Translations under genes and position numbers: made by a program
Notes under the pieces: generated by a model
Told to the model about the DNA's origin: nothing
Databases searched by the model: none
The model's input: only the letters and a program-made list of their open reading frames with translations
DNA from: Mytilus trossulus
Lineage: Eukaryota
Assembly (NCBI RefSeq): GCF_036588685.1
Contig: NC_086378.1
Span: 31,496,001-31,560,000, forward strand
Length of the DNA stretch: 64,000 bases
Reading direction: 5' to 3'
Shown: positions 4,525 to 51,200 of the stretch, piece by piece
Layout: the number at the start of each line of letters is the position of its first letter
Numbering within the stretch: position 1 is the stretch's first letter

Positions 4525-5481
4525 TTTTTGTCGAGCCTGCAACTTTTGTTGCAGAAAGCTCGACGTAGGGATAGTGATCCGGCGGCAACGGTGTTAGCTC
4601 ACTTCTTAAAAGCTTTATACTTTAGAAGTTTTTGTGTTGTGGTCTGTTTTTATTATACTATATGCAATAGGTCTACTATAATTGGTGTATGGAATGATTG
4701 TAAGGTGTACATGTCTAGCTGACAGGTGTCATCTGACCTTGACCTCATTTTCATGGTTCAGTGGTCAAAGTTAATTTTTTTATTTTTGGTCTATTTTTTC
4801 TAATACTTTATGCATTAGGTCAACTATATTTGGTGTATGGATATATTTTATGATCTATATGTTGGTTACGCAGGTTTTATTTGACCTTGACCTCATTTCC
4901 ACGGTCCGGTGCTCAGTTTTAAGTGTTTGTGTTTTGGTCTGTTTTTCTCATACTTTATGCAATAGGTCTACTATATTTGTTGTATGGAATGATTGTAAGG
5001 TGTATATGTCTAGCGGGCATGTCATCTGACCTTGACCTCATTTTCATGGTTCAGTGGTCAAAGTGATTTTTTTAAGTTTTTGTCTTTTTATCTAATATTA
5101 TATGCAAAAGGTCAACTATATTTGGTGTACTGAAATATATTATGATCTAAATTCAGTCTCGCAGGTTTTATTTGACCATGACCTCAATTTCACGGTTCAT
5201 TGCACAGTGTTAAGTTTTTGTGTTTTGGTCTATTTCTCTTAAACTTTAAGTAATAGGTCAACTATAATTGTTATATGGAAGCTTTGTTAGCTGTACCTGT
5301 CTGCCTGGCATGGTTTATCTGACCTTGACCTCATTTTCATGGTTCATTGGTCTTTGTTTAGTTATCTTGGTTAATGTTAAGTTTATGTGACAGTTGTAAT
5401 AAAGCTTCATACTAAGGACCATCAACATAATATCAATGATTAGTAAAGAAGGCGAGACATTTCAGTGTGTGCACTCTTGTT
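4525..5481 (+). mobile_element. Helentron/HINE-like non-autonomous element with internal ~150-bp tandem array
   Basis: Starts TTTTTGTCGAGCCTGCAACTTTTGTTGCAGAAAGCTCGAC (palindrome), contains repeated TGACCTTGACCTCATTTTCATGGTTCA units, and ends ...GCACTCTTGTT. Decayed relatives lie at about 21041-21800 and 62210-63410. Confidence 0.65.
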
Positions 5482-7390: not shown

Positions 7391-10300
7391 TTACGCTTGC
7401 ATATAAGTTTCAACATTATTTTTCAGTTTTTCCATAGTTCTAGTAAAGTGTTCCTGAACTTTGTCTGCGTTGTACTCATTATGTCCATGTGGGTTTTTGC
7501 AGATGGGTTTACTACACCGACAGGGGAATGAGTCGTCCTCCACAAAGCATTCGATACCTGCCAAACTACACGCACATGTATTTGGGTCGCACATGTGCTT
7601 ACAGTTGCACCCACTTTTTCTCCGTGAATCTCGAATGTCCTTGCAATCGTCTGCTTCACCTCGATCTATGTTTACTAAGCTTGATTGTCGTAGAAGTAAA
7701 CGCCGCTGAGCAGGTGTCAATCTGTGTTCGGATTTTAAACGTTTTGTAGAATAATACCAATCTTCATCTTCCAGCTTATTTATTGCATTTGTCTCACTTT
7801 GTTCATCTTCCATCGCCGAATCTCCTAATGCCGCGTGGTATGACCTTTTTCTCATTTTAGCATGATCGGCCAAAGAATATGTATCGGAGTCTGTATGACC
7901 ATACGACATTCCTGCAAGTTTTAAAGGAGTAAATTAATAATAAAAAAATAGGATAGCACACCTCACATAATTATACATATTGCTACCCGTTAATAAAAAC
8001 TACATACATCATAAAAAATTATAATGTTCCTTGTCCATGGACTCAATCATTTCAAATTATCAGGCTCTCGGGTCGTTCTATGATCTCATCTGCGAAGCTT
8101 ATGTTTACTTTTTATCATAGTATTTGATCTTGTGGTCTCATGTACTATCATTTGGAATTTCGACTTTTAAGGTATAAATTTTGAGCAAAATATGTTGAAA
8201 CTCGTATCAGAGTTGGCAAATTCACACAAACAAGACCAGGCAAGTCATTTTCATAACAGCATAGACAACCGCAATACTTATGATCACTTATGTTGGTAAT
8301 AATACTGAATCATTTATCTTTAACTTATTGTAAAAAAAAGTAACTAAGAATTTATCATAGCTTTGCTTCGACATAGTACATAGACGTTATTTTATTAATA
8401 GCATCTCAACCTAATTCAGATATTCCTGATTCAAATATAGTCGGTTATGAAATTACTCGAAGGGGAAAATGTGTCTATCATATAAAAAGATCTAGACTAC
8501 AAGTCGGTATGTGGCTAGTCTTGACCGATTCTGTTCTTTCTGTTCTATAAATTTCAAGAAGTTGCGATTTAAAATTAATGATGATCCAATTAAAAAGTTT
8601 GCATATTTAAACAAAATAAGAAGAAATAAAATTAAATTCAGAGACAAATACTTAAGTAACGAAGCAGAGTAAGTCTTGCAAGAATGGACAATTATTCCGA
8701 AGTGTTTTTTTTTATTAAATTCCAGAGTGTCATGGCAAAAGCTGCGTGACGAGTTATACTTTACCTAATGTTGAACCTCCTTCGTGTGGTACGGATGTAA
8801 ATCCTTGTTCTCTCGGGAAATAATACACAGTGACATCCTTAAATCGAACATTCTTTTCATCCTTGGATATTTTCAAGTCGTCTAAATAAAAAGTAAGATT
8901 CAATAGTCATTTTGACGGCAACAGATACAAACAAACAAACAAACAAACAAACAAACAAACAAACAAACAAACAAACAAACAAACAAATATTTTACAAGAT
9001 ATGTGTTTATAGATGTCATATAACATTTACGATGTCTGAGGGAAATGTTTTTTCCAAAGAGATTCACGTTTTCTAGATTTTTTATTTTGTATTAAATACG
9101 AGAAATTGCGAACAAGTGAATTTGATGTCCATCTATGTACGTATTTTTTTAAATTTCGCATTGCAACAAGATGGTGTATTAAAGACTTGAGATCATATGA
9201 AGTTTTTTTATTTTCGTTACGGTAAAGTTTATAACATCTTTATTCTGTTAAACAATGGCTCAAGTTCCTTGTCTGCGACGAATCCATCTTTATTTAATGA
9301 TGTATAATGCAATAATACTTGAAATTCTAGTTGGGCTTCGGTCCAATTTTTTTTCACTTTTGTATGGTGAAATGCATTCTTGTTAAAATATTGATTTATG
9401 TTGCGCTCTTAAAAGACGGTATAATAACTAAAAAAAATCCAGATAATGAATCTAAATATAATATTGCCATCTTAATTATGTCTTTAGATTCTCAAACTTC
9501 GACCAATCTTGCTGTATTGAATTTGATTGGATAATCATTAATGTGCTTTTCGAATCTGCTTAGACTCTATCTCTGCTACTCGGTGACTTTTTACAACGTA
9601 ACTATATCACTGCCTGTAGCCATGCAGGTGACTGCATGGTTGGTATCGCTATTGCATCATTGAATTGGAATTAAAGATTTCATTCTCAATAGTAAAACCA
9701 AGGATTTGTATAGTATGTAAATCCATGGTAAAACAAAGTATATTCCGTTTATTTCGTAGTTATGTCATATACATTTGTGGATTATAAATAACAATGGTAG
9801 ACAGGGGTTACTCTTTTTGGCCGTCTTGTCAGTAACACATCCATAAAATGTGTTGCTATTATGCTATTGATCATTTTAAAATATTTTACGATTCATGACA
9901 TGCAGTTAACAAAGCTTCACATTTGACTAGTACGATCCACAAAAGACATTATTATTGCAGCTAAATCAATGATTTGCATATTTATCAAAGGTACTGCCCA
10001 GGATTATAATTTAGTACGCCAGACTCGCGTTTCGTCTACATAAGACTCACCAGTGACGCTCATATCAAAATATGTATAAAGCCAGACAAGAACAAAGTTA
10101 AAGAGCATTGGGATTCTAACTTGAATTCTAAAAAGTTGTGCCAAAGACGGCTAAGGTAATCTCAGATATGCCTGGGATAAGAAAATCCTTAGTTTTTCGA
10201 AAACTAAGTACATATGTTTGACCAATAACGTGAAATCAAACAAACCTAGACAAATACGACTGCACGTGATCGCTTTCTTTTATATATACAGCCTTCAAGC

Positions 10301-29600: not shown

Positions 29601-32600
29601 AGAAACTTTCTTTTTATTTATGAAATTTCAAATGAGAAAAATTTAACCCAATTTTTTATTCACATCCCCCTTTCCCTTATTCCAAACCTAATTTCAATTA
29701 AAATATTCTAATGGAGTTTGCAACAATTACTACTCATTTAAATACATGATGTAAAAAAACTGCTTGTTATCACTGAATGGTAAAGATTATTTAAATTTAT
29801 CAGTTGGTAGTAAAAAGTGAATATACATTGTATATTGTATATAACAAAGAGGTAGTAAAAAGTGAATATACATTGTATATTGTATATAACAAAGATTTAA
29901 GTTGATTCTGGACAAAGAAAGATAACTCCAATTAAAAAAAAATCTTGCAGATATTTCTTGCTTACTATACTGGACAAAGAAAGATAACTCTTAATAAAAA
30001 AAAAAATTGCTATTTCACAATATTGTGAAATTAGATATTTCTTGCCATTGCACAATACTGTGCAATTGAAAAGACTTGCTATTGCACAATACTTAATATA
30101 ATAATTTTAGATCCTGAATCTAAGTACATGTTTAGATTCAGCATATCAAAGAATTTAATTTTTGTTAAAATCAAACTTAGTTTAATTTTGGACCCTTTGC
30201 ACTTTAATTGAGACCAATTTTAAAACTGGACCAAAAATTAAGAATCTACATACACAGTTAGATTTGGCATATCAAAGAACCCCAATTATTCAATTTTTTA
30301 TGAAATCAAACAATGTTTAATTTTGGACCCCGATTGGGGCCAACTTGAAAACTGGGCCAATAATCAAAAATCTAAGTACATTTTTAGATTCAGCATATTA
30401 AAGAACCCCAAAGTTTCAATTTTTGTTAAAATCAAACTAAGTTTAATTTTGGACCCTTTGGACCTTAATGTAGACCAATTTGAAAACGGGACCAAAAATT
30501 AAGAATCTACAAACACAGTTAGATTCGGCATATTATTAAAGAACCCCAATTATTCAATTTTGATGAAATCAAACAAAGTTTAATTTTGGACCCTTTGGGC
30601 CCCTTTTTCCTTAACTGTTGGGACCAAAACTTCCAAAATCAATACCAACCTTCCTTTTATAGTCATAAACCTTGTGTTTAAATTTCATAGATTTCTATTA
30701 ACTTAAACTAAAGTTATAGTGCGAAAACCAAGAAAATGCTTATTTGGGCCCTTTTTGGCCCCTAATTCCTAAAATGTTGGGACCAAAACCCCCAAAATCA
30801 ATACCAGCCTTCCTTTTATGGTCATAAACCTTGTGTTAAAATTTCATAGATTTCTATTTACTTTTACTAAAGTTAGAGTGCGAAAACTAAAAGTATTCGG
30901 ACGACGACGACGACGCCAACGTGATAGCAATATACGACGAAATTTTTTTCAAAATTTGCGGTCGTATAAAAACTGTATATGAGTTTGAATGTATTATATT
31001 TTCAATCTGTTGAATGTAAACACTAATTCAAACATTAATAAAAGTTGATTCCTAAAAAAAATTAACATTATTCCTATTTCCAAAAAAAAATTGATAAAAA
31101 AAACCTAAAAATGTTGATGTTTACATATTAAGGCCTTCTTAAAAGTATTCTATAACTAAACAAAAACTAAAAAATGCAAATTTTCATACGAACAATACTT
31201 TTTATTTTAAAAACAAACTGTTTATGATTAAGTTATTATTTATTTTGAACATATTGGAAAAAATATTATAAATGTTTAATAAACATGAAATCACAGGCAT
31301 TTTTTTTTATGTGAAACATGTAATTTCTATCAATTTAGCAGATAAATTTTCTACTGAGGTAGATTAATCAATGAGTGATATATTTCTCCTAGAAGAAATT
31401 TAAAGGTCTGAGTGAATAAACTATACAGGAAACAATACCTGTTGTATTTGTTAGATGGGACAATAGAACTGCCAAAAGTTTAAATGGACAGGTAACTTGC
31501 AGGTGAATCTATAGAAAGGTTCAATAGGGTTCGCTATAATAATTAAAAAAAAATAGGAATTGCCGATTTATTCTGATGTTTCCAATTTTGTGGGATTTTG
31601 AATTTTGTATCTTTTATAAATTATCATGATTATATGTTTCATAATTTTAAGCATTTGAATTTATGATGATAGCCTTAACTTGCTTAAATTTAAAAATAGA
31701 TCAGTGTTACAGTTTACAAAATAACAAAGATAACTTAATGAATGGAGGTGCTCATTTAGATGCTAGATTGAGCATTGAGTTATTGTCCAAACAGGTTTAT
31801 AGAAATACAGAATTACTGTGTGATATTTATAGGAATGGGAGTCATAATTTTTTTTATGTGTTATACTGTTTTAATGCACTTTAACTTACCATCTGTTTCT
31901 TCATATTCGCTTGCTTCTTCTTTTCTTTTAGATGTAACCTAGGGATATAAATATAATATAACATGAGTTAAAAATTATCATATTGCTGTAAACTATCTAG
32001 AAATCATTAAACAATATATTATATAAATAGAATAAATGAAACAACTGCAAACTATAGGGTGATAAAATATGATTTTAAATCTAGCATTCAGAGCATGTAT
32101 AGCCAAATTTTTTCAGAAAAAAATATTTTGAAGTCTTATAAGCATGCTTCAAGTTGTGAACTTTAGTTATGTTAATGTAGAAATCAGTTTATTATTATCT
32201 ACATGGAACTTCTACCCAGATTACTTTACAGTTACATATAAAAAGGTTGATGACAGTTTCGCATTTCTACTTTTAAGTTACAGTTTCACATTTCTTTTTT
32301 CTATTAATCACCTCACCTCACCTATCCTCTTCATGCTGGTCGGCATTTAAGGCTTCTATTAATAGTTACACATTTCTACTTTCTATTTTCAGTTTCACAT
32401 TTCTACTTTCTATTTACAGAAGAATGGCTAACCTATGAACTAACCCATCATGTCTGAACAATTCAACCCGTTAACAAAGACAGTCAGTAGAACTGCCCCA
32501 GTAACTAATGCACCAAGTTTACAAAGTATATGTAGGAATACAATTTTACATGCTATAACACTCAAAAGAATCAAGCAGGTAAATATTACAGTAACATGAG

Positions 32601-35600
32601 GTTTAGGTAATGAAAAAAATAGTACAAAAATTCCTCTTCTAAGTTTATACAAATTTGTATTTGTTTGGCTTTTAAATAACTATTTTGATCTGAGCATCAC
32701 TGATGAGTCTGATGTAGACAATGTGTGTCTGGTGTATTAAATTATAATCCTGGTACCTTTGATAACTACTACACCACTGGTGGATGTTTCGTCCCTGGGC
32801 GTTTCACCAGCCCAGTAGTCAGCACTTCGGTGTTGACATGAATATCAATTATATGGTCATTTTATAAATTTCCTGTAACAAAACTTTAAATTTTTCTAAA
32901 AAGAAGGGATTTTCTTATCCCAGGAATAGATTACTTAAGCGGTATTAGGCACAACTTTTTTTGAATTTTGAACCTCAATGCTCTTCGACTTTATACTTGT
33001 TTGGCCTTAAAACTATTTTGATCTAAGCTTCACTGATGAGTCTTATGTAGACAAAACACGGGCATGGCGTATTAAATTATGATCCTGGTACCTTTGATAA
33101 CTATTTACAGAAAGAAACATGTTTGGTTTGGCATCAATTGATGTTTCTAAAATGGGTTGTAGTCATTAAGCTAGTAGGTATTTCACAATCTATAGAATAT
33201 ATTTATCCTAGAATTCAGAACTCAACACAATCGGGAACAAACCAAGTTGGAAATTTATAAGAATTATCATACTTTAACGATTTGTTTTTATTCAATCCTT
33301 TTCAGTCTTAAAATGAGTTGAAAAAATAAATAATAGGCTTGTGAAATTACCTTACAATGAAAGGGTTTTATTTGGCCAAACATGGGGTATACTTATCAAT
33401 AAAACAGCGAAAAAGTGACCTATACATGCAGTACACCAAGACCAGAATAAATACCAAATTATGTGTGCCACAACTTATTTGCATACATGATACTAGTTGG
33501 ATATATATTTTGTTGAATGTTCTTATTTCATAGTTCTGTCATATAAATAAGAACTTTTTTTTTACCTAACCTCAGAAGTTTGATATTTTTTATCCAGATA
33601 CAAATTATACTGTTTTTGTACTCCCTTACATTATTAGAAATTTAAAATATACAGAAAATCATGAAATATTCTGTACATTTTTGTATTACCATTTTTAGGC
33701 AGATGAGTCGCTTCCCTTACCTAAACCTCTGATGAGAACAGTCAGTGTTCTCAACTTGAAAGATTTTGTCATTGACGCAGAAAAATTAGAACCTGGTAAT
33801 CACCTGAAAGAAAGCTACCCAGCTACATGTATCTTTGATGGAATCCCATGTATCATCAAAGTCAAATCTAAAGGTATTCCATACAAATTTACATTTTTAA
33901 TTTAAATTTGTTTTACACTGAGTCTTGTCATTTTTTTGAGGTGATGGATATTTATTTTAATGTCTTTATCATAAATCAAGCCTTTGTTTTTTTCTCTTTT
34001 GAATTGTTTCACAATTTGTCAAGCTGGGGCCTTTTATTACATTCTTTTTGTTCTGTGTTTTGGTCAACTTGAAGGTCATAAAATATCCTACATCCAGTTG
34101 AAGTATTTGTCTCCTTGCCAATCATACCACATATTTTTATTTTTACATTTATAAATGTTTTGCCTTTATCCTATAGATAGCAAGCCAGAATTGGACAACC
34201 CAAGTTTCATGGCATCGTTTGAAGACAAGAACTCTGTCTGTTGTGTTTATGAAGTAACAGATACTCTTAAAGATAGAATTGTTCAATGCAAACTCCAAAA
34301 CACCAGATTCCAAGAGGTTTTTATATGGCGTTTAGCAAAGACACTTTTGGAGTTTGCACTAAATGGAAAGATAACTCTATCTACAAAAGTAAACAGTACC
34401 ATGATACATTTTTACGGTCCAAAAGGAACAATCTTTCTTGAAGCCACTGATAACCCAATGACTGAAATGATGGGAGCCGATTCAGCAATCTATGAGGCCC
34501 CTGAGGTTTTACGACAGGAAGAACCAACTAACCAAGCATTTTCATGGACAGTTGGATGTATCATTTATGAAATGTTAGCATTGGAACCTGCCTTCTTTGA
34601 TAGAACTGGTACTAATCCATTTCAAGTATTTATGGACATGATGCAGGGCATACTACCCCCTGAACCTACAGAGGGTAGTCCAGAAATAATAGAAATTATG
34701 TGGCACTGTTTTAAATCAGATCCTGCAAAAAGAATTCCTCCAGAAGATTTGCTTAGATTTGCAATAGCCCATTCAGAATAAAGCTTTTATTTTATGTCAA
34801 ATGTTTAGCTCTTAAACGGCTTGGTTATTTTGTTAAGATTCTCTATTTGATAACTTGTTTCCAAATATTAACAATTAATTTGTTATGTTACTTAACAATT
34901 TTAAGAACGGATGATTTATTTTAGCCAGATACTTATACATGTTATTGCTACCTCTTTTAAATATTTTTTTTCAGAAATCTTTCTTTTAAATATAAAAATA
35001 CACAGACTGATTTTAATCCATATCAATGTTTTATATAGATTGTATGTTTTATCAATAAAGTTTTATTATAATTATTAATATATTTAATTCAATGTAACAT
35101 TCAACAACTTGGCAACATCATGGTGGTCAGTTTATATAAGCAACACAACAGGTGCCACATGTGGAGTAGTTTCTGCTTACCCTTCCACCTGAGATCACCC
35201 CTTGTTTTTGGTGGGGTTCGTGTTGTTTATTCTTTAGTTTTCTATGTTGTGTCATTTGTACTATTGTGTGTCTGTTTGTCTTTTTCATTTTTAGCCATGG
35301 CGTTGTCAGTTTGTTTTAGATTTATGAGTTTGACTGTCCCTTTGGTATCTTTCTCTCCTCTTTTATATAGGCAGAGGAAGCTAGATTACCTAGGAAAAAA
35401 ACATTAACCTACTGGCAGTAAATCCTAGTCAATTAAGATCAAAGTCAAACCCACCTTGCCGTAAGTGGGGTTTCAAATCTCACAACCTGGGTTGATAAGC
35501 CAATGTTTACTGTAGATGAATAACTAAGACCATGTAGACCACTTGACCACAACTGGATATGTGTTTAACCCCACTATTTTAGATTCATATAATTTTGCAT

Positions 35601-48200: not shown

Positions 48201-51200
48201 AAAAGAATTATAATTTTTAATTCCAAAAAATGGAGCCCACCAAAATAAATGAATCTGCAGTATTTATGTGATTACGTTTAGGATTCTAAGAACATGATAC
48301 ACTGTCATTAATTTTATTTTAAGTAAGACCTGTAGAATAAAGATTAAATAAAATTGAGAATGGAAATGGGGAATGTGTCAAAGAAACAACAACCCCACCA
48401 TATAAAAACAACAGCAGAAGGTCACCATCAGGGGTCTTCCATGTAGGAAACATTCCCGCACCCGGAGGTGTCCTTCAGCTGGCCCCTAAACAATTATATA
48501 CTAGTTCAGTGATAATGACTGCATACTAATTCCCAAATTGTACACAAGAAACTAAGCTAAACTTTTGATTTTTTTTCCAAATATTGACATATTCCTGAAA
48601 TCAACATGATCAAAAGCAAATGCTTGCAGTCTAATTTTGGAAGTGATTTGTGACAAATTTGCATGTGTACCCAATGTCTATAGGTTAATAAAAAAAAATT
48701 AACTAACTAAAATAAATTCCAACTACACACCTATATTTCTTAAGCAGAAAACGGTAAACACACATTTATCTTATATAGTGGTGTCATATTTTTGAGAATG
48801 TCACAAGAAATTTAGTATTTTTAAGAGCAGTTAAATTTTGTTTTATTAGACCCACAGCCAGTTGAAGCAGCACCTCCTAATAAGAAAAAGAAGAAAGAAG
48901 AAATGTTGTCATTGAGGGAAGAAATAGAGCTTATGTCAAAAGATGATACAAGTGGCCCACCAGATGTAAGATCTTACTATACACACATTTGGAAGTTCCC
49001 TCTCAATATTTACAAGTATTTACAATTCTAGTAATAAAGTTTGGTGTTCTCTTTGAATAAAAAACAGTACTTTTTACATTTTGTCTTTTGATGCTTCTAA
49101 AGGTTTTTTTCAAAAAGATATTGAAATTAATCTAATTTCACAGTTGCATATTCATATTTATATTTGAGACCATAACATAAATTTGTAAATACTCATGTGG
49201 AACTCATGTAGATCTGTGTTGAAGTGGCTTGAGCTTTCAATGTGATGCCTAACATTTTTTTAATAGCTCTTAATAAAATTAAAAATGAAACGATTGGTTA
49301 CGAAAAAAAGTTTTTGTTTTAGATTAAATATTTGTTAATCTATAAGTGTAATTTGTTTCTGAACATATCTTTAAGAATAAGATAGTTGATAAAACACAAG
49401 AAAGTCAAGTGAAAGAGATTAATAATTGTATGAAATGAAGCATAGGGTATATGCAGCAGACTTGTAAAATACCAACACAATAGCATTGTGGGTACAGAAA
49501 AATACCACAAAGAAAGTAAAATACCAGCACAATAGCATTGTGGGTACAGACAAATACCACAAAGAAAGTAAAATACCAACACAATAGCAATGTGGGTACA
49601 GAAAAATACCACAAAGAAAAAACAAACAACAAATGTTGTACTTCTGGTGCAATACTCACTGGTATTGACATAGTTCACATCTATGTTGTATACATTTGCT
49701 ATGCTGCATTTTTACTAGTTTTCATTGTTTTGTATTTACAGGCAGAAGAATTAGTGAAACGTTTATCAGACCTTGAGCATTCAGCGTCTAGTGATGCTGC
49801 TGTAAGAGAGAAGATTGCTGCTCTTCCACCTGAAGTGTCTGATGTTAACCACCTTGCCAAAATTCATGGTAAAAATTCATCTACTGTGAATTCATTTATT
49901 TTTTGTGTGTACCAATTTTCCTTGATATTTTATTCAGAGTTCTTCTAAAGTCTGAATTCGAGCCTGAAAGAAAATTTGTTCTTCCTTGATTGAAAATTTG
50001 TGGTTCACTATCATGAAAGAAATCCATGAAAACTAGTGTCACAAGAATAATTAATAATAAATTCACAAATGACTTTTTTTTAGGACATTTCTTTTTATGT
50101 TTGAGCAAAATTGATGAATTACTTACCTGTGGAATTATTCAAAGTATATTATTTTTTTCCCAAAGATTTTCGGATAGAATCATAGAAAGCATGGCAACAA
50201 GTTAGATGTATGTATCAAACCTAGTTTGCAGCACATCATGACTTATTTTCCTTAGCCTCTCTCCTTATGGACATTTTTTAAAGTTTCTATTTTATACAAC
50301 ACTTTAACTATTTGATAAATTCTGTGTAATATGTGATCAGGATAATAAATAGGATTTGCATATTTTAAAGTGTATGTAGAAAGCTCGGGTCAGTGAGGGT
50401 CCTAACGTCAAATTCACAGTTGAACTTTTTGTATTAAAGCAGCTGCCATGTTCAGACATGCTGAAATCAATTAACTTCATTTTAATGCAATATCATCCGA
50501 AATTGGCAGGTTCACTTAACGGAAAAGCCTTCAGCTTTGTATGATGCAATGTTTTGAAATGACTTTTAATGTAAAAAAAGCAGTAATTAAATTTCACAAA
50601 AATTTATATTTTGATTTTGTTTGTTTTTCTGAGCTCTAGTGAATTAAATATTTATGTTATGTTTTGTTAATACACAAAATGTAGTATTATTTTTTAACAT
50701 ATACTATTTAAATTTCATGTTAAAAATAAGTATTAAATGTTGACAGAGTTGGTTGATAATTATCAACTTCAAAAATTTCAAATTTGATTGATACTGATGA
50801 TACCTGTGGAAAGCCCACCCTGTAGATGATTATCAATCAAATTTTCCTCTAATTTAAGGATGAACAATCTTTTTTATATTGTACAGATTAGAAATCAAAA
50901 GAAGTACTGGAGATATTATCATTCATTTACAATGAATTATTTTTGTAAACATGCAGATTTGATTTTTTTTTTTTAAACAATTCATTTTAATATTTTGTAA
51001 TCATTTATTGACTCATAAATATTTTTATGAACAACAATTTTTTGTTCTGCACTAAAATTTAAAACATTAGGCAAATATAAGGGAAGAAACTCTTTCTGAA
51101 TTTAACATGATTTGTTTTGCCTATTTAAAATTTGGAAGAAAGACAACCTATTCAATAGACCTATGTATTACACCAAGACTAACTGTCAATAGAAAGGTCA

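What the first reader, a model, noticed from the sequence alone, without database searches (positions are those of the whole stretch)
32450..34781. SOCS-box + NEK6/7-like pseudokinase fusion: candidate new Cullin5 E3-ligase substrate receptor
Seen: three exons splice in frame to 302 aa, while the ORF track shows only the last exon. Exons 1-2 join to give [38 protein letters not shown], i.e. a BC-box (PSLQxxCRxxI) and a Cul5-box (LPLP) with normal spacing. The rest follows NEK6/7 as I recall them: LKDFVI..KL..G...[17 protein letters not shown] vs LANFRIEKKIGRGQFSEVYRAACLLDGVPVALK; ASFEDKN vs ASFIEDN; [15 protein letters not shown] vs GCLLYEMAALQSPFY; CFKSDPAKR vs CINPDPEKR. The Gly loop is eroded, helix C appears deleted, HRD..N is replaced (STKVNSTM), DLG/DFG is replaced (EAT) and the subdomain IX Asp is lost. 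The beta3 Lys and APE remain. Established: SOCS boxes recruit Elongin B/C-Cul5-Rbx2 and usually sit C-terminal to SH2, ankyrin, WD40, SPRY or GTPase domains. Inference: a dead kinase fold reused as the substrate-binding module of a ubiquitin ligase, possibly for NEK partners or substrates. I do not know of a described protein with this architecture.
Basis: partly seen in the sequence, partly recalled or inferred. Interest (0 to 1): 0.9.

Follow-up and report, generated by a model that had tools for sequence, protein, structure and literature searches.

The report
SOCS-box NEK-like pseudokinase gene
This mussel gene encodes a dead copy of the NEK6/7 kinase with a ubiquitin-ligase docking motif (SOCS box) at its front end, and it belongs to an old, unstudied family, found in sea anemones, jellyfish, an annelid and molluscs, that most likely marks bound proteins for degradation.

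Summary
Three GT-AG exons (32450-32578, 33699-33873, 34177-34781, + strand) encode 302 aa. A RefSeq protein of Mytilus trossulus named "Nek7-like" (P0014) is identical to all three exon translations.

The N-terminus is a canonical SOCS box. In 31 family members with a complete N-terminus, the BC-box Leu is kept in 30, the BC-box Cys in 29, and the Leu and second Pro of LPLP in all 31. The rest is a kinase fold closest to NEK7 (family profile 153 bits, against 98 for NEK1). It lacks the Gly loop, the HRD Asp (3 of 34 members keep one), the DFG Asp (0 of 34) and, in molluscs, helix C.

Named members come from bivalves, gastropods, a chiton, an annelid and cnidarians, so the family is not only molluscan. 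The genome has a separate true NEK6/7 gene. A predicted complex of the SOCS box with Elongin C scored 0.67, against 0.02 for the best control.

The most likely role is a Cullin-5 substrate receptor that uses the pseudokinase as its binding module. That is inferred, not shown, and the substrates are unknown. I found no paper on this architecture. Databases list these proteins only as "Nek6/7-like". No RNA reads could be laid and no dN/dS computed.

The parts
32450..32578 (+). Exon 1, codons 1-43: start codon, conserved N-terminal hairpin (FNPxTKTV), BC box and second SOCS-box helix
   Evidence: Partial Pfam SOCS_box hit, E 0.006. The AF2 model has strands at 3-6 and 11-14 and helices at 24-36 and 41-47.
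32516..32545 (+). BC box, S23-L-Q-S-I-C28-R-N-T-I32, the predicted Elongin C binding helix
   Evidence: In 31 members with a complete N-terminus, L24 is kept in 30, C28 in 29 and I/V32 in 30. L24 and C28 are the lowest-error contacts in the predicted Elongin C complex.
32579..33698 (+). Intron 1 (GT...AG, phase 0), which splits the SOCS box between helix 2 and the Cul5 box
   Evidence: Proteins P0014 and P0001 run continuously across the junction.
33699..33873 (+). Exon 2, codons 44-101 plus the first base of codon 102: Cul5 box, third SOCS helix, and the degenerate N-lobe (no Gly loop; beta1-beta3)
33711..33722 (+). Cul5 box core, L48-P-L-P51
   Evidence: L48 is kept in 31/31 members, P49 in 26/31, L/I/V50 in 31/31 and P51 in 31/31. 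It lies about 23 aa after the BC-box Leu in all members.
33858..33860 (+). Codon K97, the equivalent of the beta3 (VAIK) lysine
   Evidence: Lys in 25 of 34 members, Arg in 7, Glu or Gln in 2, so it is not under catalytic constraint.
33874..34176 (+). Intron 2 (GT...AG, phase 1)
   Evidence: The split codon G|AT gives the Asp102 present in P0014.
34177..34781 (+). Exon 3, codons 102-302 plus stop: beta4-beta5 (no helix C before them) and the whole C-lobe
   Evidence: Pfam Pkinase E 8e-12. In the AF2 model beta3 (93-100) joins beta4 (112-118) by a short loop with no helix. The alignment shows a gap of about 20-25 residues relative to cnidarian members.
34380..34403 (+). Degenerate catalytic loop, S170-T-K-V-N-S-T-M177, in place of HRDxKxxN
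   Evidence: In the family, the HRD Asp is kept in 3/34 members and the catalytic Asn in 6/34.
34440..34451 (+). E190-A-T-D193 in place of DFG/DLG
   Evidence: The DFG Asp is kept in 0/34 members.
34497..34505 (+). APE motif (A209-P-E211), opening the most conserved block (alphaEF to alphaG, residues about 205-265)
   Evidence: P210, E211, W225 and G228 are invariant in 42 sequences. Y207, C229, Y232, E233, P239, A240, P262, C279 and R287 are at least 90% conserved.
35054..35059 (+). First AATAAA after the stop codon, the likely poly(A) signal (3'UTR of about 290 nt)
   Evidence: This fits the 1.06-1.26 kb contigs that carry the whole CDS in congeners.

Best explanation
The gene encodes a 302-aa protein built from two modules. 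An N-terminal SOCS box (BC box plus LPLP Cul5 box) most likely docks onto Elongin B/C and, through it, Cullin-5/Rbx2. The rest is a NEK6/7-derived kinase fold that has lost the Gly loop, the catalytic loop, the DFG Asp and, in molluscs, helix C, but keeps the fold-defining and peptide-binding C-lobe (P+1/APE, alphaF, alphaG). The likely mechanism is a CRL5 substrate receptor in which the dead kinase is the substrate-recognition domain. This is functionally analogous to the way Tribbles pseudokinases present substrates to the COP1 ligase. Shown here: the gene model, the architecture, loss of catalytic residues across the family, strong conservation of the Elongin C and Cul5 contact residues, NEK6/7 ancestry, an origin before bilaterians, and a predicted Elongin C interface. 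Inferred: real Elongin B/C-Cul5 binding, ligase activity, lack of nucleotide binding, and the identity of the substrates.
For: The gene model equals RefSeq protein P0014. Congener contigs of 1061-1262 nt hold the whole 906-nt CDS, although the gene spans 2.3 kb, so they are spliced transcripts. Pfam SOCS_box scores 26-27 bits in orthologues against a cut-off of 23.5, with a best family E-value of 6.4e-13 and hits in 28 of 42 aligned members. The BC-box and Cul5-box residues are almost invariant from cnidarians to molluscs, while the residues around them vary. AF2 gives mean pLDDT 91.7 and pTM 0.87, with three SOCS helices at 24-36, 41-47 and 52-59. In the predicted complex with Elongin C, ipSAE was 0.67/0.67/0.65 against a best control of 0.02. 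That mark was reached by 51 of 78 solved complexes and 2 of 108 mismatched pairs. The runs agree in at least 90% of contacts and the partner pLDDT is at least 62. The interface joins Elongin C residues 80-119 to partner residues 17-35, centred on L24 and C28. Elongin C is encoded in this genome, which also has at least 72 other SOCS-box sites. For the kinase part, the family profile scores 153 bits against NEK7, 98 against NEK1 and 79 against NEK2. Foldseek's top hit is NEK7 at E 6e-13, and VIA gives NEK7 Z 20.9, rmsd 5.2, 240 residues aligned. Catalytic residues are lost across the family. The family forms one side of a branch with 100% support against 40 active kinases. A separate true NEK6/7 gene lies on contig C2.
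Against: There is no experimental evidence of any kind. The window's own protein scores 23.0 bits on Pfam SOCS_box, 0.5 below the curated cut-off. The complex prediction used Elongin C from another invertebrate (identical in the C-terminal 46 aa, 47/55 in exon 1), had no Elongin B, and belongs to a class with many solved examples, so the pass may only reflect likeness. dN/dS was not computed. No substrate is known. SOCS boxes usually sit C-terminal to the binding domain, whereas this one is N-terminal.
Confidence: 0.6

Rival explanations
1. The protein is a scaffold or decoy rather than a receptor. The pseudokinase mimics NEK6/7 and sequesters or allosterically regulates NEK6/7 partners, for example the NEK9 docking peptide. 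Here the SOCS box controls only the protein's own stability or localisation through Elongin B/C and does not deliver substrates to Cul5.
For: The NEK6/7-specific similarity extends to alphaD/alphaE (L132 and W152 nearly invariant). Those elements form the groove where NEK9 docks on NEK7 (PMC4632185, read). From my own knowledge, not tested here, Elongin B/C binding stabilises several SOCS proteins.
Against: The Cul5-box residues are as conserved as the BC box (L48 and P51 in 31/31, P49 in 26/31). A role that needs only Elongin B/C would not require that.
Confidence: 0.2
2. The protein is an atypical but active kinase, with catalytic residues that have migrated as in WNK or CASK, and it carries a SOCS box so that the kinase itself is turned over or localised.
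For: The beta3 Lys is kept in Mytilus and in 25/34 members, and APE is invariant.
Against: No member has HRD plus DFG. The DFG Asp is kept in 0/34, the HRD Asp in 3/34 and the catalytic Asn in 6/34. There is no Gly loop, helix C is absent in the mollusc clade, and the beta3 position is Arg, Gln or Glu in 9 members.
Confidence: 0.05
3. The protein is a pseudo-receptor that titrates Elongin B/C or Cul5 away from other SOCS-box proteins and does not bind substrates itself.
For: The genome encodes many competing SOCS-box proteins, with at least 72 sites.
Against: The strongest conservation lies in the C-lobe surface elements (alphaEF to alphaG). A mere competitor would not need that.
Confidence: 0.05
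4. The finding is an annotation artefact or a decaying pseudogene of NEK6/7.
For: All catalytic motifs are lost.
Against: The 302-aa ORF is intact, with canonical splice sites, and is 91-98% identical among four Mytilus species. Full-length relatives occur in further bivalves, gastropods, a chiton, an annelid and cnidarians. Transcript-sized contigs exist and the fold prediction is confident.
Confidence: 0.01

Closest known systems
SOCS-box substrate receptors of Cullin-5 ligases (SOCS1-7/CIS, ASB, SPSB, WSB, RAB40; Pfam PF07525)
   Same: It has a BC box ([ST]LxxxCxxx[IV]) followed about 23 aa later by LPLP, and a predicted three-helix box. The predicted contacts run to the C-terminal helices of Elongin C.
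   Different: The partner domain is a kinase fold, not SH2, ankyrin, SPRY, WD40 or a GTPase. The box is N-terminal to that domain rather than C-terminal. I found no described SOCS-box protein with a kinase or pseudokinase domain.
NEK6/NEK7 protein kinases
   Same: They are the best sequence and fold match by a wide margin: 153 bits against 98 for NEK1, Foldseek E 6e-13 and VIA Z 20.9. Size is similar, with a bare kinase domain and a short N-terminal extension. RefSeq names the gene 'Nek7-like'.
   Different: It is not the orthologue, because a true NEK6/7 gene lies at G000:C2:90.40 Mb. The Gly loop, HRD, catalytic Asn and DFG are lost, and helix C is deleted in molluscs. It carries a SOCS box. 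The C-terminal 200 aa sit in one exon, against at least five exon-sized matches over NEK6/7 residues 140-321.
Tribbles pseudokinases (TRIB1-3), adaptors for the COP1 ubiquitin ligase
   Same: The proposed logic is the same: a degraded kinase fold binds the substrate and a short linear element recruits an E3 ligase. TRIB1 (5cem) appears among the structural neighbours, and a 'tribbles homolog 2-like' cluster is a language-model look-alike.
   Different: The kinase ancestry differs (CAMK-like against NEK). The E3 system differs (a COP1-binding C-terminal tail against an N-terminal SOCS box for Elongin B/C-Cul5). There is no evidence of specific common descent.
LRRC41/MUF1, an N-terminal BC-box plus Cul5-box protein (from my own knowledge, not tested here)
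   Same: It is a precedent for a SOCS/BC box placed N-terminal to the presumed substrate-binding domain.
   Different: Its binding domain is a leucine-rich repeat, and it is unrelated in sequence.

Membership tests
SOCS box (PF07525) / CRL5 substrate receptor | BC box [STAP]-L-x-x-x-[CSA]-x-x-x-[LIVA] | tested here: met
   The window has S23-L-Q-S-I-C-R-N-T-I32. In the family, L is kept in 30/31, C in 29/31 and I/V in 30/31.
SOCS box (PF07525) / CRL5 substrate receptor | Cul5 box with an LPxP core at normal spacing after the BC box | tested here: met
   LPLP lies at residues 48-51, about 23 aa after the BC-box Leu. L48 and P51 are kept in 31/31 members.
SOCS box (PF07525) / CRL5 substrate receptor | Pfam SOCS_box score over the gathering cut-off (23.5 bits) | tested here: inconclusive
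   The window's protein P0014 scores 23.0 bits, E 9.7e-5, just under the cut-off. Orthologues score 26.0-27.2 bits. Of 42 aligned members, 28 match at E <= 0.01, with a best E of 6.4e-13.
SOCS box (PF07525) / CRL5 substrate receptor | Three-helix SOCS-box fold | tested here: met
   AF2 places helices at 24-36, 41-47 and 52-59 with block pLDDT of 86-90. This is a prediction only. The box could not be folded alone because it spans two exons.
SOCS box (PF07525) / CRL5 substrate receptor | Predicted interface with Elongin C through the BC-box helix | tested here: met
   ipSAE was 0.67 against a best control of 0.02. The mark was reached by 51 of 78 solved complexes and 2 of 108 mismatched pairs. 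The interface joins ELOC 80-119 to partner 17-35. The pass may reflect likeness to solved complexes.
SOCS box (PF07525) / CRL5 substrate receptor | Physical binding of Elongin B/C and Cul5/Rbx2, and ubiquitylation of a bound substrate | not testable with these tools
   This needs pull-down and in vitro ubiquitylation.
NEK6/7 protein kinase (active enzyme, orthologue) | Protein kinase fold with NEK6/7 as nearest relative | tested here: met
NEK6/7 protein kinase (active enzyme, orthologue) | Catalytic residues: Gly-rich loop, HRD Asp, catalytic Asn, DFG Asp, helix C Glu | tested here: not met
   The window has STKVNSTM and EATD at the catalytic-loop and DFG sites. In the family, the HRD Asp is kept in 3/34, the Asn in 6/34 and the DFG Asp in 0/34. 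The helix C column is a gap in 17/34 members, including Mytilus.
NEK6/7 protein kinase (active enzyme, orthologue) | Orthology to NEK6/7 | tested here: not met
   A separate gene at G000:C2:90400550-90405253 matches a NEK6/7 orthologue at 65-86% identity per exon. The SOCS-pseudokinase family is split from the active kinases by a branch with 100% support.
Tribbles-type pseudokinase E3 adaptor | COP1-binding C-terminal motif and Tribbles-specific degraded N-lobe | not tested
   I considered this only as a functional analogue. The best sequence relatives are NEKs, not Tribbles.

The most novel reading that the evidence does not exclude
This would be a pre-bilaterian family of Cullin-5 receptors that uses a dead NEK6/7 fold to capture NEK6/7's own binding partners, such as the NEK9 docking peptide or NLR-type sensors that bind the NEK7 C-lobe in mammals. 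It would act as a ubiquitin-dependent brake on NEK or inflammasome-like signalling. It is retained in cnidarians, annelids and molluscs but appears lost from the usual model animals.
Probability: 0.12. Interest if true: 0.85.

Novelty: new variant of a known kind. Interest (0 to 1): 0.62.

Why it matters
SOCS-box proteins are defined by the domain that picks the substrate. A pseudokinase would be a new class of that domain. It would also be a second, independent case, after Tribbles-COP1, of a dead kinase wired to a ubiquitin ligase. The family is old: it spans Cnidaria, Annelida and Mollusca and is catalytically dead in every member examined. It is currently hidden under "Nek6/7-like kinase" annotations that wrongly imply enzyme activity. 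It occurs in Nematostella (XP_001630230.2), so it can be studied experimentally. Finding its substrates could show what NEK6/7 surfaces recognise independently of catalysis.

Tried and rejected
So read laying was not used, no RNA junction reads were examined, and no orthologous CDS was available for dN/dS.

Steps left out on purpose:
I used the database protein P0014, which is identical to all three exons.
- The SOCS box could not be folded alone because it spans two exons.
- The exact M. trossulus Elongin C could not be used whole. It has three exons, one shorter than 30 aa. I used the invertebrate Elongin C P0265 instead. Elongin B was left out because no searches remained.

Searches that led nowhere:
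- The protein-atlas search returned only generic kinase clusters.
- Seven literature searches found no description of the architecture or of the accession numbers. The two papers that mention both Pfam names concern other matters.
- The bacterial promoter and terminator scan is not meaningful for this eukaryotic gene.

Limits of what was found:
- The tree does not by itself place the family next to NEK6/7, because the other 38 active kinases are unnamed. The NEK6/7 ancestry rests on the PDB profile scores.

Rejected readings: pseudogene, active kinase and NEK6/7 orthologue (see the rival explanations and the membership test).


Full report
THE OBSERVATION

Exon 1 is 32450-32578, exon 2 is 33699-33873 and exon 3 is 34177-34781, all on the + strand. 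Both introns are GT...AG, and the phases (0, then 1) give 909 nt, or 302 codons plus a stop. An in-frame TAA at 32441-32443 lies nine bases upstream of the ATG, so nothing can be added to the N-terminus in this frame.

Pfam gives a partial SOCS_box match on exon 1 (E 0.006, profile positions 3-26 of 39, cut off by the exon end). It gives nothing on exon 2, and Pkinase on exon 3 (E 8e-12, C-lobe).

A homology search with exon 3 found 302-aa proteins. Their 90% cluster contains RefSeq proteins of four Mytilus species, all named "serine/threonine-protein kinase Nek6/7-like". One of them, P0014 (M. trossulus XP_063439941.1/XP_063439942.1), is identical to all three exon translations (43/43, 58/58, 200/200) and has the Asp predicted for the split codon. 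I used P0014 as the full-length protein from that point on.

Several cluster members sit on assembled contigs of 1061-1262 nt that hold the whole 906-nt CDS, although the gene spans 2.3 kb. Those contigs must therefore be spliced transcripts. The first AATAAA after the stop is at 35054, which fits an mRNA of about 1.2 kb. The gene is single-copy in the genome.

THE SOCS BOX

On full-length proteins Pfam SOCS_box scores 23.0 bits for P0014, 0.5 below the 23.5-bit cut-off. It scores 26.0-27.2 bits for M. galloprovincialis, M. californianus and Pinctada. Of 42 aligned family members, 28 match at E <= 0.01, with a best E-value of 6.4e-13; ten of the 42 are fragments with no N-terminus.

Conservation is more telling than the score. 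Among 31 members with a complete N-terminus:
- the BC-box Leu is kept in 30, the Cys in 29 and the Ile/Val in 30;
- in the Cul5 box, L48 is kept in 31, P49 in 26, L/I/V50 in 31 and P51 in 31;
- the spacing between the two boxes is constant at about 23 residues.

AlphaFold2 run with this alignment gives mean pLDDT 91.7 and pTM 0.87. It places three helices at 24-36, 41-47 and 52-59, which is the SOCS-box topology, with LPLP between helices 2 and 3.

The genome encodes Elongin C. Exon 1 is at L004:1432-1596 and further exons are in L005. The genome also has at least 72 other SOCS-box sites over Pfam's cut-off.

I tested a predicted complex of an invertebrate Elongin C with residues 15-64 of P0014. 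The Elongin C used was P0265, identical to the mussel protein over the C-terminal 46 aa and 47/55 in exon 1. The results were as follows:
- ipSAE was 0.67, 0.67 and 0.65, against a best control of 0.02.
- The pass mark was reached by 51 of 78 solved complexes and by 2 of 108 mismatched pairs.
- The runs agree in at least 90% of contacts, and the partner pLDDT is at least 62.
- The interface joins Elongin C residues 80-119 to partner residues 17-35, with L24 and C28 at its centre, which is the canonical arrangement.

Many such complexes have been solved, so the pass shows likeness and does not prove that this copy binds.

THE KINASE-LIKE DOMAIN

A profile of 42 family members scores 153 bits against NEK7 (E 9e-44) over the whole domain, against 98 bits for NEK1 and 79 for NEK2. 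Foldseek ranks NEK7 chains first (E 6e-13). VIA-align gives NEK7 Z 20.9 (rmsd 5.2, 240 residues aligned, model range from 28 or 55 to 302), statistically tied with NEK2 and Aurora A.

I aligned 34 family members to a bona fide NEK6/7 orthologue (P0175, 535 bits to NEK7). The catalytic positions fare as follows:
- Gly-loop glycines: kept in 4/34 at the first position and 0/34 at the second.
- HRD Asp: kept in 3/34.
- Catalytic Asn: kept in 6/34.
- DFG Asp: kept in 0/34.
- Beta3 Lys: Lys in 25, Arg in 7, Glu or Gln in 2.
- APE Pro and Glu: kept in 34/34.

In the window the catalytic loop reads STKVNSTM (34380-34403) and the DFG site reads EATD (34440-34451).

The mollusc and annelid clade also lacks about 20-25 residues where cnidarian members keep a helix-C-like segment. 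In the AF2 model, beta3 (93-100) runs into beta4 (112-118) through a short loop with no helix.

What stays invariant or nearly so are the fold-defining and peptide-binding C-lobe residues: Y207, P210, E211, W225, G228, C229, Y232, E233, P239, A240, P262, C279 and R287. This pattern, with the fold and surface conserved and the chemistry gone, is the signature of a pseudokinase under selection for binding.

RELATION TO NEK6/7

The genome has a separate true NEK6/7 gene at G000:C2:90400550-90405253, with exon-sized matches at 65-86% identity to P0175. The window gene is therefore an old paralogue, and the RefSeq name "Nek7-like" misleads as to activity.

In a tree of 29 family members and 40 active kinases, the family is one side of a branch with 100% SH-aLRT support. 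The other active kinases in that tree are unnamed, so the NEK6/7 ancestry rests on the profile scores.

The gene structure also differs. Here the last 200 aa are one exon, whereas in NEK6/7 the corresponding region (residues 140-321) gives at least five separate exon-sized matches.

DISTRIBUTION

Named members come from the following groups:
- Bivalves: Mytilus (four species), Pinctada, Tegillarca, Saccostrea, Mya and Dreissena.
- Gastropods: Patella, Bradybaena and Elysia.
- A chiton: Liolophura.
- An annelid: Owenia.
- Cnidarians: Rhopilema, Actinia and Nematostella (XP_001630230.2).

An exhaustive profile search found 24 clusters (at 50% identity) below E 1e-30 and 253 below 1e-10; the weaker ones grade into ordinary kinases. 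Every full-length member I inspected has the SOCS box and none has HRD plus DFG. The fusion and the loss of catalysis therefore predate the split between cnidarians and bilaterians.

No named member came from vertebrates, arthropods or nematodes.

NEIGHBOURHOOD

The flanking genes are unrelated to this one: a CSRNP-like gene near 7.4 kb on the minus strand and an RPRD1/CREPT-like gene near 49.5 kb on the plus strand. There is no cluster or operon-like context.

INTERPRETATION

The best reading (about 0.6) is a Cullin-5 substrate receptor whose recognition module is the dead NEK6/7 fold. Its logic is analogous to the Tribbles-COP1 system. The equal conservation of the Cul5 box and the BC box argues for ligase assembly rather than Elongin B/C binding alone.

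The main rival (about 0.2) is a decoy or scaffold for NEK6/7 partners whose SOCS box only tunes its own stability. [quoted passage not shown] That is a lead and nothing more.

An active atypical kinase, a pseudo-receptor and a pseudogene are all unlikely, for the reasons given under the rival explanations.

NOVELTY

Seven full-text searches found no description of a SOCS-box kinase or pseudokinase, of this family, or of its accession numbers. The proteins exist in databases only under automatic names. I class the finding as a new variant of a known kind: a SOCS-box receptor with a new type of binding domain. It is of real interest to the pseudokinase and ubiquitin-ligase fields, and it is testable in Nematostella. 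It remains wholly computational and no substrate is known.

Noticed in passing
window 32255-32441 (+): A 27-nt unit (consensus AGTTTCACATTTCTACTTTCTATTT..) occurs four times, at 32255, 32282, 32364 and 32391, directly upstream of the start codon. The 20-nt core gives 3 matches in the window against 0.08 expected. On the opposite strand it reads as GAAA-rich tandem units, which could be a promoter or 5'UTR element.
   Followed up: partly
window 32424-32443 (+): Two mini-uORFs lie just before the main ATG: ATG GCT AAC CTA TGA at 32424-32438 and ATG AAC TAA at 32435-43. A possible splice acceptor (tatttacag) ends at 32419, so an upstream non-coding exon may exist.
   Followed up: no
G000:C3:16.309-16.365 Mb; G000:C1:26.001-26.028 Mb; G000:C4:20.130-20.150 Mb: There are long tandem arrays (period about 1.7-1.9 kb, dozens of copies) of intronless ORFs of about 270-289 aa. 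They are 31-32% identical to the C-terminal two thirds of a NEK6/7 kinase domain. This looks like a large kinase-like gene expansion or a satellite-like repeat carrying a kinase ORF.
   Followed up: no
G000:C2:90400550-90405253 (+): This is the true NEK6/7 orthologue of M. trossulus. It is split into exon-sized matches of about 35-52 aa that are 65-86% identical to a NEK6/7 reference. Its exon structure contrasts with the single 200-aa exon of the window gene.
   Followed up: partly
L004:1432-1596; L005 about 1563-1608 and about 4824-4961 (G000:C1:98.170-98.175 Mb): This is the Elongin C gene of M. trossulus, with three coding exons. The C-terminal 46 aa are identical to those of insect and gastropod Elongin C.
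   Followed up: partly
window 7391-7909 (-) and 49538-49948 (+): The neighbouring genes include a CSRNP-like exon (Pfam CSRNP_N, E 3e-36) and an RPRD1/CREPT-like exon (E 2e-12). Neither is functionally linked to the finding.
   Followed up: partly
family alignment A4 /: Cnidarian and several unnamed members keep a helix-C-like segment (..W...v.H.Ni.k) that the mollusc and annelid clade has deleted. Three unnamed members (P0072, P0075, P0088) carry an extra insert of about 8 residues (consensus F.FPNHPHH) in the N-lobe.
   Followed up: no
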